A DNA stretch of 64,000 bases, taken from positions 186,001 through 250,000 of IMG/VR virus record IMGVR_UViG_3300021964_000012; one strand, 5' to 3'. Positions 13,479 to 54,070 of the stretch are shown here, one piece after another; position 1 is the stretch's first letter; the number at the start of each line of letters is the position of its first letter. A model generated the notes under the pieces. That model saw nothing but the letters and a program-made list of their open reading frames with translations. It did no database searches and had not been told where the DNA came from. A program made the translations under genes and the position numbers.

Positions 13479-13519
13479 CCTTTTTTATTATTGCATGGCA
13501 GGCATGCTAAATACATATA

Positions 13520-13563
13520 CGTTCACCCAAGAGGGCGGAAGTAGGCAATCGCTGAAGGAACGC
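13520..13563 (+). ncRNA. Glutamine riboswitch (glnA-motif class)
   Basis: CGUUC-A-[CCC AAGA GGG]-CGGAAGUA-[GGC AAUC GCU]-GAAG-GAACG-C. The P1/P2/P3 three-way junction has the conserved GGAAGUA and GAA E-loop strands. Confidence 0.85.
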
Positions 13564-13588
13564 ACTTAACCTTAAAAGGGAGAGTGTA

Positions 13589-53487: not shown

Positions 53488-53678
53488 TATTTGTCTTCCT
53501 TTTTCTTCTTACTACGTTGCCAAGGATTTGTTAATGCGCCTTCTGTTCTTGCATTAGCAACACAGACTGTAACCTTTCCACCTTTTGCAAAGTACTCGTC
53601 ATAAGCCTGTTGCAATTCTGGGTCTTTACTTGTTCTTGGTGTAAAGTCTATTTCTTTAATTGTAGATTCGTCTGACAT
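53487..53678 (-). CDS. Small early hypothetical protein (F.AKGGKVT.C motif)
   Basis: AGGAG RBS; intact ORF. Confidence 0.7.
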   Translation of the reverse strand: MSDESTIKEIDFTPRTSKDPELQQAYDEYFAKGGKVTVCVANARTEGALTNPWQRSKKKKEDK

Positions 53679-53689
53679 ATTTGCTCCTG

Positions 53690-53880
53690 TTATAAAACTT
53701 GATCTTTTTACAATCAGTACAGATGATCAATCTGTACCGGGTAGTTTTTAGTTGTAGTGTTATGGTTCCTTGAGTCCTACCTGACTTGTAAACCTCTGTA
53801 GTTGTCGAGCACCGCTCTCCCTTAATCAACTACTTACACTTTACTGCTGGCTATGTCATATTGTTTCCTTTTCCTTACTA
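53690..53880 (-). ncRNA. Structured early leader/sRNA containing the minigene AUG-ACA-UAG
   Basis: Strong SD (AAGGAAAAGGAA) then Met-Thr-stop (53859-53851). Helices GUAGUUG/CAACUAC, GAGC/GCUC, AGUC/GACU and GUACAGAU/AUCUGUAC. Confidence 0.45.
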
Positions 53881-53887
53881 TGCTGTT

Positions 53888-53915
53888 ATAATAACACAGT
53901 TTAAGGTTAAGTCAA
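53888..53915 (-). promoter_or_regulatory. sigma70-type promoter (TTGACT-16-TG-extended TATTAT)
   Basis: Read directly, upstream of the minigene leader. Confidence 0.55.
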
Positions 53916-53936
53916 CCTTTTTATTTGTTTTGGCCA

Positions 53937-54035
53937 TAAAAAAATCGCCCAACTAGTGGACGATCTGATTAAAACCGCTTAGTAACTAAGCGAACATGTT
54001 GGCGCCTTCTCCCAACTTGCGAATTCTTTTTGTTA
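53937..54035 (-). ncRNA. Candidate ~100-nt late sRNA (three hairpins) with minigene AUG-UUC-GCU-UAG
   Basis: TATAAATA at 54040-54047; hairpins GUUGG/CCAAC and CGCUUAG/CUAAGCG; terminator AUCGUCCA/UGGGCGAU plus U-tract. No ORF longer than 3 codons from this AUG. Confidence 0.6.
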
Positions 54036-54070
54036 CTTTTATTTATACTAATAAAAAGACGACTATGTTT

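What the first reader, a model, noticed from the sequence alone, without database searches (positions are those of the whole stretch)
53937..54047. Self-contained ~100-nt late sRNA with a hairpin-gated Met-Phe-Ala-amber minigene
Seen: a perfect TATAAATA, hairpin 1 holding GAGAAGG in its loop directly before AUG, hairpin 2 containing the stop, and an intrinsic terminator. There is no protein gene between promoter and terminator. It is the second UAG-ended minigene within 150 bp. Inference: a discrete regulatory RNA or ribosome decoy made late in infection.
Basis: partly seen in the sequence, partly recalled or inferred. Interest (0 to 1): 0.6.

Follow-up and report, generated by a model that had tools for sequence, protein, structure and literature searches.

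The report
Conserved small RNA in jumbo phages
This stretch is a real, separately transcribed non-coding RNA gene of about 70-100 bases whose core is kept almost letter for letter in well over a hundred uncultured marine giant-phage sequences, but its tiny Met-Phe-Ala reading frame is an accident of this copy, not a conserved feature.

Summary
Comparison changes the reading. The window lies in a 328-kb marine/estuarine jumbo phage that encodes a T4 gp55-type late sigma factor. The same unit occurs in 57 IMG/VR contigs and at least 120 metagenome contigs, giving 96 distinct variants. The unit is TAAATA, about 14 nt, AUUCGCAA, a 5-bp stem with loop GANAAGGCG, ANGU, then a variable hairpin and a U-run. 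Both hairpins covary: 10 of 14 pairs show double changes, and one variant has a U·G wobble. In most relatives hairpin 2 is itself the terminator. The 'AUG' is ACG or AAG in 28 of 96 variants, and the stop position wanders, so the minigene is not conserved. Some copies have opposite-strand genes on one or both sides, so the unit stands alone. Metatranscriptome contigs contain it, and one ends 9 nt after hairpin 2. It has no Rfam family, no cultured-phage homologue and no paper. I found no target in the phage genome or in rRNA. Verdict: a new late-promoter sRNA family, probably acting in trans through its invariant tail and loop. The partner is unknown, and the minigene and ribosome-decoy reading is not supported.

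The parts
54040..54047 (-). T4-type (gp55) late-promoter box TATAAATA. The family consensus is NNTAAATA, lying 11-17 nt (mode 14) before AUUCGCAA.
   Evidence: TAAATA is present in 95 of 96 distinct family members at that spacing. A gp55-like sigma factor is encoded in the genome. The motif is about 5-fold enriched in intergenic DNA.
54025..54034 (-). Predicted 5' end of the RNA (about 54034-54033) and the variable A-rich start of the 5' tail (AACAAAAAGA).
   Evidence: Inference from the T4 rule that transcription starts 6-7 nt after TATAAATA. It was not mapped. The sequence is variable but A-rich in alignment A2.
54017..54024 (-). Invariant single-stranded tail AUUCGCAA.
   Evidence: The tail was left free in the scan, yet all 53 hits carry it.
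53998..54016 (-). Hairpin 1: 5-bp stem GUUGG/CCAAC with a 9-nt loop GAGAAGGCG. The loop is invariant except for its third base.
   Evidence: A scan that left the stem free and the metagenome scan give stem variants GUAGG/CCUAC, GGUGG/CCACC, GUUAG/CUAAC, GUCAG/CUGAC and the wobble variant GUUGG/CCAGC. There is no unpaired variant. A scan that left the loop free gives no other loop. Helix 1 is 100% paired.
53986..53997 (-). In the family this is a linker ANGU plus the 5' arm of hairpin 2.
   Evidence: The triplet is AUG in 68, ACG in 26 and AAG in 2 variants. The frame length is not conserved.
53971..53993 (-). Hairpin 2 (8 pairs including U·G) plus UUUU. This is the family's intrinsic terminator, with U7-9 in most relatives.
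   Evidence: 7 of 9 pairs show double changes, and loop length varies. An RNA-library contig ends against adapter sequence at 53966, 9 nt after the stem.
53938..53966 (-). Hairpin 3 plus U7: a second, stronger intrinsic terminator, found mainly in the window's group of relatives (also in L033).
53888..53915 (-). Sigma-70-like promoter (TTGACT, 16 nt, TATTAT) that starts the next, presumably early, unit. It is not part of the RNA but sits next to it in about two thirds of loci.
   Evidence: A similar promoter lies within 110 nt downstream in 39 of 58 distinct loci.

Best explanation
The locus is a stand-alone gene for a small non-coding RNA. It belongs to a previously undescribed family confined to a lineage of uncultured marine and estuarine jumbo myoviruses of about 330 kb or more that use a T4 gp55-type late sigma factor.

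How it is made (inferred): host RNA polymerase carrying the phage late sigma starts about 6 nt after TATAAATA (around 54034). It stops at hairpin 2 (about 53966, a 69-nt RNA) or, when it reads through the weak U4 tract, at hairpin 3 (about 53938, a 97-nt RNA).

What the RNA looks like (shown by comparison): an A-rich 5' tail ending in the invariant AUUCGCAA, then a 5-bp stem presenting the invariant loop GA-N-AAGGCG, a 4-nt linker, and a terminator hairpin with a U tail.

How it works (inferred, not shown): the RNA acts in trans. Its invariant single-stranded tail and loop are the recognition surface for a partner that is itself highly conserved. That partner could be an RNA bound by short bipartite pairing or a protein that reads the hairpin; I rank pairing slightly ahead.

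The AUG and UAG are by-products of the linker and of the stem of hairpin 2, and are not translated signals.
For: (1) Family.
- The exact core occurs in 53 IMG/VR stretches.
- Four more carry compensated stems.
- Together these give 96 distinct variants.
- The covariance model R1 scores them 64-93 bits and finds a single copy in the 328-kb genome.

(2) Selection rather than recent spread.
- The core of about 36 nt is invariant.
- In the same molecules, hairpin 2 and the promoter-to-core spacer have diverged.
- The whole intergenic region is 81-94% identical in DNA, whereas the flanking proteins are 65-78% identical.

(3) RNA structure.
- 96.3% of cells are paired.
- 10 of 14 pairs show changes on both sides.
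- 0 of 500 shuffles reach the observed values.
- Slid controls collapse to 25-47% paired.
- Stem 1 has four different compensated variants and one U·G wobble variant, all found in scans that left the stem free.

(4) Own promoter.
- TAAATA sits at a fixed distance in 95 of 96 variants.
- A gp55-like sigma is encoded here (phrog_12791, E = 1e-73) and in four other carriers (62-73% identity).
- TAAATA is enriched before genes.

(5) Stand-alone unit.
- In 15 of 58 distinct loci the next downstream ORF is on the opposite strand.
- In 7 of 58 the upstream ORF is on the opposite strand (examples).

(6) RNA evidence.
- Contigs of metatranscriptome runs from two studies cover the RNA, including an L167-like variant.
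- One contig meets Illumina adapter exactly at 53966, 9 nt after hairpin 2.

(7) Not a known family.
- No Rfam hit at gathering threshold; the best scores are 24 bits (threshold 115) and 19.5 bits (threshold 50).
- No match in 50,697 phage records.
- No paper holds the core sequence.
Against: - No 5' end has been mapped, and the late timing rests on the T4 analogy.
- The RNA-library evidence is from assembled contigs, which can contain DNA and cannot show strand or abundance.
- The contig that ends at 53966 also runs 638 nt into the upstream late gene. The 3' end seen there may therefore belong to that mRNA, with the conserved core serving as its 3' UTR.
- No target was found.
  - 9- and 10-mers complementary to the core occur in the phage genome at about chance level.
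  - Duplex energies against all 371 start regions are no better than for shuffled RNA.
  - There is no bipartite site.
  - There is no rRNA complementarity.
- The host is unknown, so host targets could not be tested.
- All scans required two of the three core blocks to be exact, so strongly diverged members would be missed and the invariance is partly ascertained.
Confidence: 0.6

Rival explanations
1. One reading: a translated Met-Phe-Ala-stop minigene, gated by hairpin 1 holding the Shine-Dalgarno sequence. It would work as a ribosome or tRNA trap (as lambda bar minigenes do) or as a 30S decoy late in infection.
For: In this copy an AAGG/GGAG-like loop lies 7 nt before an AUG, followed by two sense codons and UAG. 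68 of 96 variants keep AUG. 23 of 49 viral variants have a three-codon frame.
Against: - The start is ACG in 26 and AAG in 2 of 96 variants.
- Frames run from 3 to more than 40 codons, and the peptides differ (MFV, MFA, MSV, MYVQV and others).
- The G that completes GGAG is the one freely varying loop base.
- C-to-U changes in the codons are matched by changes in the opposite stem arm, so they track pairing rather than coding.
- There is no rRNA complementarity beyond 8 nt, and duplex energies are within the shuffled range.
Confidence: 0.05
2. A purely cis-acting boundary element. The conserved sequence would be the 3' UTR and terminator of the upstream late operon, insulating the sigma-70 promoter that follows. 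It would be comparable to the stem-loop plus early-promoter cassettes (PeSL) of T4-type phages, and no free sRNA would matter.
For: - In 41 of 58 loci both neighbours are on the same strand, and 39 of 58 have a sigma-70-like promoter within 110 nt downstream.
- An RNA-library contig runs from the upstream gene through the core to 53966.
- The upstream 194-aa gene has its own TAAATA box 54 nt before its start.
- The relative G001 has only a plain early promoter at the same place.
Against: - A terminator needs only a GC-rich hairpin and a U-run. That does not explain an invariant 36-nt segment upstream of it, or a TAAATA box at fixed spacing in 95 of 96 variants.
- In 7 of 58 loci the upstream ORF is on the opposite strand, so there is nothing to terminate.
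- The element is single-copy, whereas PeSL cassettes are repeated.
Confidence: 0.12
3. A cis-regulatory leader, riboswitch or attenuator. Hairpin 1 plus the tail would be a sensor, and the terminator(s) would decide whether late transcription enters the downstream genes.
For: - The architecture is that of an aptamer followed by a terminator.
- In the window's group, the 3' arm of hairpin 1 (CGCCAAC) could pair with the 3' arm of hairpin 3 (GUUGGGCG), which would compete with that terminator (seen directly in the sequence).
- Most loci have same-strand genes downstream.
Against: - In 15 of 58 loci the next ORF downstream is on the opposite strand.
- The downstream genes differ between groups and usually have their own sigma-70-like promoter.
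- No alternative pairing is conserved across the family, because hairpin 3 is largely confined to the window's group.
- There is no Rfam riboswitch match.
Confidence: 0.08
4. A DNA-level element: an operator for a dimeric DNA-binding protein (inverted repeat GTTGG-N9-CCAAC, with the GAATTC and GGCGCC palindromes), or a mobile cassette kept identical by recent transfer.
For: - Several short palindromes lie in the core.
- Symmetric changes in an operator can mimic compensatory changes.
- The element is found in several genomic contexts.
Against: - The spacer/loop and the flanks are asymmetric yet invariant.
- There is one U·G (T·G) variant, GTTGG/CCAGC, which fits RNA pairing but not DNA symmetry.
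- Within the same element the terminator and spacer have diverged, which argues against recent transfer.
- The element is present in RNA libraries.
Confidence: 0.05

Closest known systems
Short PR'-proximal transcripts of lambdoid phages (lambda 6S RNA; StxS of Stx phages, PMC7547250, seen)
   Same: A phage late promoter is followed within about 100-200 nt by an intrinsic terminator, giving a short discrete RNA. StxS is reported to act as a trans regulator.
   Different: In those phages the short RNA is a by-product of Q antitermination, and the same promoter drives the late operon. Here the promoter is of the T4/gp55 type, no antitermination system is evident, and in 15 of 58 loci no same-strand gene follows. 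There is no sequence similarity.
Lambda bar minigenes (SD, AUG, one sense codon, stop); from general knowledge
   Same: This copy has an SD-like loop, an AUG, two sense codons and UAG. The neighbouring AUG-ACA-UAG (53859-53851) resembles a bar minigene even more closely.
   Different: The start codon and the frame length of the first frame are not conserved. Translation and peptidyl-tRNA drop-off were not tested.
3'UTR-type bacterial sRNAs with their own promoter inside or at the end of the upstream gene (for example DapZ, MicL); from general knowledge
   Same: The promoter overlaps the stop codon of the upstream ORF in the 85-aa group (GAATAAATA). The terminator is shared with the mRNA. There is a conserved single-stranded 'seed', an A-rich 5' part and a U tail.
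   Different: No chaperone or target is known, and target searches were negative. The RNA is phage-encoded and probably depends on the late sigma factor.
ncRNAs of related cultured jumbo phages (PA5oct ncRNA001-004, PMC7318152)
   Same: They are abundant transcripts without ORFs in jumbo myoviruses whose UvsW-like helicase is about 50% identical to the window's. Their function is also unknown.
   Different: They are 236-619 nt long, were reported without known promoters, and are unrelated. Model R1 finds nothing in PA5oct, Atu_ph07, Phosso or XbC2.
Rfam near-misses: atoC RNA (RF01733) and GibS (RF04182)
   Same: A similar two- or three-hairpin layout ending in a terminator.
   Different: Scores are 19.5 bits against a gathering score of 50, and 24 bits against 115 (E = 0.4-0.7 on a 521-nt search). 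These are chance-level matches and it is not a member.

Membership tests
T4-type (gp55-dependent) late promoter | A -10-like box TATAAATA with no -35 element | tested here: met
   A perfect TATAAATA lies at 54047..54040. NNTAAATA is present in 95 of 96 family members at fixed spacing.
T4-type (gp55-dependent) late promoter | The phage encodes a gp55-like late sigma factor | tested here: met
   T4 gp55 matches G000 at 319827-320054 (E = 1.5e-5). The 308-aa ORF hits phrog_12791 'sigma factor for late transcription' at 1.3e-73 and phrog_234 at 1e-23. Homologues are found in four other carriers.
T4-type (gp55-dependent) late promoter | The motif is used genome-wide in front of genes | tested here: met
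   10 of 13 TATAAATA sites and 69 of 208 TAAATA sites lie in the 6.3% of DNA that is intergenic. Many NATAAATAC boxes lie 15-30 nt before start codons. The gene map used was a crude ORF map.
T4-type (gp55-dependent) late promoter | Transcription starts there, late in infection | not testable with these tools
   No cultured host-phage pair is available, and the read data were contigs only.
Intrinsic (Rho-independent) terminator | A GC-containing hairpin followed directly by a U-run, with the structure kept by covariation | tested here: met
   Hairpin 2 has 7 of 9 pairs with double changes, and relatives have U4-U9. Hairpin 3 is followed by U7 in the window.
Intrinsic (Rho-independent) terminator | RNA 3' ends map 7-9 nt after the stem | tested here: inconclusive
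   One metatranscriptome contig meets adapter sequence at 53966, 9 nt after hairpin 2. This is a single contig of unknown library strandedness.
Any Rfam 15 family | Score at or above the family's gathering threshold | tested here: not met
   No hit in the region at gathering threshold. The best E-value-mode hits are far below threshold.
Translated minigene (lambda bar type) | Conserved SD, start codon and very short frame | tested here: not met
   The triplet is AUG in 68, ACG in 26 and AAG in 2 variants. Frames run 3 to more than 40 codons. The loop base that completes GGAG varies.
Cis-acting leader / riboswitch | Always followed by a regulated gene on the same strand | tested here: not met
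   The next downstream ORF is on the opposite strand in 15 of 58 distinct loci.
Trans-acting base-pairing sRNA | Own promoter and terminator, with a conserved single-stranded seed | tested here: met
Trans-acting base-pairing sRNA | An identifiable complementary target | tested here: inconclusive
   None was found in the phage genome or in the rRNA of three bacteria. The host is unknown, so host mRNAs were not tested.
Hfq-type sRNA | Binding to Hfq or another chaperone | not testable with these tools
   Only suggestive features are seen: a U tail after the terminator and an A-rich tail with A-R-N triplets (AAC AAA AAG AAU).

The most novel reading that the evidence does not exclude
The invariant tail-plus-hairpin is a dedicated ligand or decoy for a conserved host factor or phage protein: a late-phase takeover or counter-defence RNA. 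It would be needed by a globally distributed lineage of marine phages of about 330 kb or more. This would be the first sRNA class known to be driven by a T4-type late promoter.
Probability: 0.3. Interest if true: 0.8.

Novelty: new variant of a known kind. Interest (0 to 1): 0.6.

Why it matters
Small RNAs encoded by lytic phages are few, and almost none has a known role.

- This family has a compact, well-defined architecture.
- Its 36-nt core is far more conserved than the surrounding proteins.
- It is present in more than a hundred marine, estuarine and Tara Oceans contigs.
- It is apparently expressed from the late transcription programme of T4-related jumbo phages.

That gives a concrete, testable handle on RNA-based regulation or host manipulation in abundant but uncultured ocean phages. 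It also adds a family that Rfam and phage annotation pipelines currently miss. Finally, it is a cautionary example: an SD-AUG-stop 'minigene' read from a single sequence disappears once relatives are compared.

Tried and rejected
(1) Cultured phages.
- Nucleotide searches of 50,697 phage records found nothing, with either the 1.3-kb locus or the 80-nt RNA.
- Model R1 found nothing in Phosso, Atu_ph07, PA5oct, XbC2 or the 316-kb IMG/VR relative G001.

(2) Bacterial genomes.
- The core pattern gave 70 hits in 185,579 species genomes. That equals the chance expectation for 17 fixed bases in about 1.2e12 positions.
- 69 of the 70 lack the family flanks. Only L100, a contig binned in a Legionellales MAG, is a true member.

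(3) A mistyped scan. One search had one N too many, returned only unrelated hits, and wasted a scan.

(4) Targets.
- 9- and 10-mers complementary to the core occur in the phage genome at about chance level.
- RNAduplex against the -70..+30 regions of 371 ORFs gave a best energy of -28.0 kcal/mol, while the minima for shuffled RNA ranged from -23.2 to -31.6.
- Looking for sites complementary to both tail and loop within 80 nt found 2 sites against 1.8 expected, and one of the two is the antisense of the gene itself.
- 16S and 23S rRNA of a Pseudomonas, a rhodobacter and a Bacteroides showed at most 8 nt of Watson-Crick complementarity, with energies no better than shuffles.

(5) A partner protein.
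- An 85-aa family lies next to the RNA in 20 of 51 viral loci, in two different orientations.
- It has no Pfam or PHROG match and only unnamed viral Atlas clusters.
- It is absent from the window's genome, so it is not an obligate partner.

(6) Ideas considered and dropped.
- Tail-to-loop pseudoknot (CGC with GCG): sterically implausible, because a 2-nt linker would have to span the helix.
- Likeness to a tRNA D-arm: contradicted by the covariation in stem 1.
- Likeness to boxB/nut or put RNA: there is no closing pair around a GANAA pentaloop, and downstream genes are often on the other strand.

(7) Cyanophage origin. No psbA (PF00124) is found in the genome, so the glutamine riboswitch does not by itself point to a cyanobacterial host.

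Full report
THE SEQUENCE. All genes around the finding run on the minus strand. Read on that strand, the finding consists of:
- TATAAATA at 54047..54040;
- an A-rich stretch;
- AUUCGCAA at 54024..54017;
- hairpin 1, GUUGG-GAGAAGGCG-CCAAC, at 54016..53998;
- AUG UUC GCU UAG at 53997..53986;
- hairpin 2, UCGCUUAG-UUA-CUAAGCGG, at 53993..53975, followed by UUUU;
- AAUCAG;
- hairpin 3, AUCGUCCA-CUAGU-UGGGCGAU, at 53964..53944, followed by U7 to 53938.

The pattern scan calls both hairpin 2 and hairpin 3 terminator-like. The 98-nt RNA folds into exactly these three hairpins (-26.6 kcal/mol, z = -2.4). A sigma-70-like promoter (53915..53888) and a second mini-frame, AUG-ACA-UAG (53859..53851), follow.

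THE GENOME.
- The window is bases 186001-250000 of a 328,292-bp IMG/VR virus record with direct terminal repeats and 37.5% GC.
- Its UvsW-like helicase is about 50% identical to those of the jumbo myoviruses Phosso, Atu_ph07, PA5oct and XbC2.
- It encodes a gp55-like late sigma factor.
- TATAAATA is not enriched in the window as such: 8 sites against 6.7 expected.
- Genome-wide, 10 of 13 copies lie in the 6% of DNA that is intergenic, usually 27-69 nt before a start codon. The shorter TAAATA is about five-fold enriched there.
- The site in the finding is the outlier, lying 362 nt from the next ORF.

RELATIVES.
- Loci found through the two flanking proteins show that the 392-nt intergenic region is 81-94% identical in DNA. 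The flanking proteins are only 65-78% identical.
- An exact scan for the hairpin 1 core found 53 IMG/VR stretches. All have the same layout: NNTAAATA, about 14 nt, AUUCGCAA, hairpin 1, ANGU, a hairpin of very variable sequence and length, then a U-run.
- In most of them this second hairpin is followed directly by U7-9, so it is the terminator. The extra hairpin 3 is found mainly in the window's group (also in L033).
- Each block was left free in at least one scan.
  - With the tail free, every hit has AUUCGCAA.
  - With the loop free, the same 53 hits return, all with GANAAGGCG.
  - With the stem free, the same 53 return, plus four stretches with compensated stems (GUAGG/CCUAC, GGUGG/CCACC, and GUUAG/CUAAC twice) and 17 unrelated hits.
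It added GUCAG/CUGAC (two compensated pairs) and GUUGG/CCAGC (a U·G wobble).
- In total there are 96 distinct true variants.
- On the model-based alignment, 96.3% of cells pair, 10 of 14 pairs show changes on both sides, no shuffle out of 500 reaches the observed values, and slid controls fall to 25-47% paired.
- The genome holds a single copy.

WHAT THIS EXCLUDES.
- Minigene. The triplet is AUG in 68, ACG in 26 and AAG in 2 variants. Among 49 viral variants, only 23 have a three-codon frame; the rest run 4 to more than 40 codons with different peptides. Codon changes are mirrored by changes in the opposite stem arm. The loop base that would complete GGAG is the one freely varying loop base.
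- Ribosome decoy. There is no complementarity to the 16S or 23S rRNA of three distant bacteria beyond 8 nt, and duplex energies are no better than for shuffled RNA.
- Leader or riboswitch. In 15 of 58 distinct loci the next downstream ORF lies on the other strand.
- Mere 3' UTR or terminator. In 7 of 58 loci the upstream ORF lies on the other strand, and a terminator does not need an invariant 36-nt core or a promoter box at fixed spacing.
- Recent horizontal spread as the reason for identity. The terminator hairpin and the promoter spacer of the same element have diverged.
- DNA operator. The asymmetric invariant loop and the U·G variant fit RNA pairing better than DNA symmetry.

EXPRESSION.
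- Six metatranscriptome runs hold part of the locus.
- Contigs from four studies were laid on the locus. All four cover the downstream leader (53667-53866 or 53905).
- Two cover the RNA itself. One record spans 53879-54048, and an L167-like variant also appears.
- One 742-nt contig covers 53966-54048 plus the upstream gene of an L042/L052-like relative. It then runs into Illumina adapter exactly at 53966, which is 9 nt after hairpin 2.
- That fits an RNA 3' end at the first terminator. However, it is a single contig, and it may be the end of the upstream late mRNA rather than of a short RNA.
- Contigs cannot show strand, 5' ends or abundance, and RNA libraries can contain DNA.

MECHANISM.
- Shown by comparison: a promoter-like box, a structured RNA with two covarying helices, a terminator, and a stand-alone position.
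- Inferred: a gp55-dependent start near 54034, late timing, and products of about 69 nt and 97 nt.
- Inferred with low certainty: action in trans through the invariant tail (AUUCGCAA) and loop (GA-N-AAGGCG).
- The freely varying third loop base suggests that this base is flipped out or not contacted.
- No target was found in the phage genome.
- The host is unknown. The genome has no psbA and only three tRNAs.
- A protein partner is therefore about as likely as a host RNA target.

COMPARISON WITH KNOWN SYSTEMS.
- Nothing in Rfam 15 reaches threshold.
- No cultured phage record carries the RNA.
- No paper holds the core sequence.
- By architecture, the nearest analogues are the short PR'-terminated RNAs of lambdoid phages and bacterial 3'UTR-type sRNAs that have their own promoter.
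- By phage relationship, the nearest are the unexplained ncRNAs of the jumbo phage PA5oct, which are unrelated in sequence.
- Other carriers encode a gp55-like sigma 62-73% identical over its C-terminal part. CheckV rates them 17-74% complete at 78-244 kb, which suggests genomes of about 330 kb or more.
- A more distant 316-kb relative lacks both the RNA and the downstream leader, and has a plain early promoter at the syntenic place.

VERDICT. This is a real and previously undescribed phage small-RNA family, abundant in marine metagenomes.

Noticed in passing
window 53679-53915 (- strand): A second conserved non-coding element lies directly downstream. It consists of a sigma-70-like promoter and a leader of about 200 nt before a 63-aa ORF. 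The leader contains an SD-like AAGGAAAAGGAAAC and an invariant AUG-ACA-UAG (53859-53851) in all 12 distinct relatives aligned. It also has a covarying hairpin in the block GGUUUACAAGUCAGGUAGGACUCAAGGAACC and a covarying hairpin GGUACAG/CUGUACU. RNAalifold predicts 34 pairs, 11 of them with double changes. There is no Rfam hit. It is present in metatranscriptome contigs of four studies. Unlike the first mini-frame, this one is invariant.
   Followed up: partly
G000:C1 61903-61978 (complement), outside the window: The phage encodes only three tRNAs: Thr(UGU), Trp(CCA) and Arg(ACG). tRNA-Thr(UGU) reads ACA, the single sense codon of the invariant AUG-ACA-UAG mini-frame. This may be coincidence.
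   Followed up: no
window 13518-13566 (+): A glutamine riboswitch aptamer (RF01739, 53.7 bits against a gathering score of 35) lies in this phage genome. The genome has no psbA, so a cyanobacterial host is not implied.
   Followed up: no
L024:1196-1450 (-) and 17 further distinct homologues (loci listed): An 85-113-aa protein family (MHTKFK...RWSIRW...GVDIRF...) lies next to the RNA gene in 20 of 51 viral loci. In 14 it is upstream on the same strand, and in 6 it is convergent downstream. It has no Pfam or PHROG match and no named Atlas cluster, and it is absent from the window's genome.
   Followed up: partly
L100 (PBLX01000022.1, 61 kb) and contig C43 of the same MAG (G006): A marine 'Legionellales' MAG contains a true copy of the RNA and, on another contig, a gp55-like sigma factor 73% identical to the window's. 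Either jumbo-phage contigs were binned into the MAG, or this is a weak hint to the host.
   Followed up: no
window 53944-53951 versus 54003-54017 (- strand): AGUUGGG...GCG occurs both in hairpin 1 and in the 3' arm of hairpin 3. The 3' arm of hairpin 1 (CGCCAAC) could therefore pair with the 3' arm of hairpin 3 (GUUGGGCG). This is a possible alternative fold that competes with the second terminator, and it exists only where hairpin 3 is present (the window's group and L033).
   Followed up: no
whole genome G000 (e.g. window 32099, 40171, 6430, 10935): The probable late-promoter consensus of this phage is NATAAATA(C/A/T), lying 15-70 nt before many start codons, including those of very large ORFs. 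It could be used to annotate the late regulon.
   Followed up: partly
L017:2540-2645 (IMG/VR contig of 316 kb, G001): A more distant relative keeps the gene order: a 251-aa glycosyltransferase-like gene, small ORFs, then the 63-aa homologue. It has neither the RNA nor the structured leader, only a plain TTGAC-N17-TATACT promoter. Both non-coding elements are therefore lineage-specific additions at a boundary between late and early units.
   Followed up: partly
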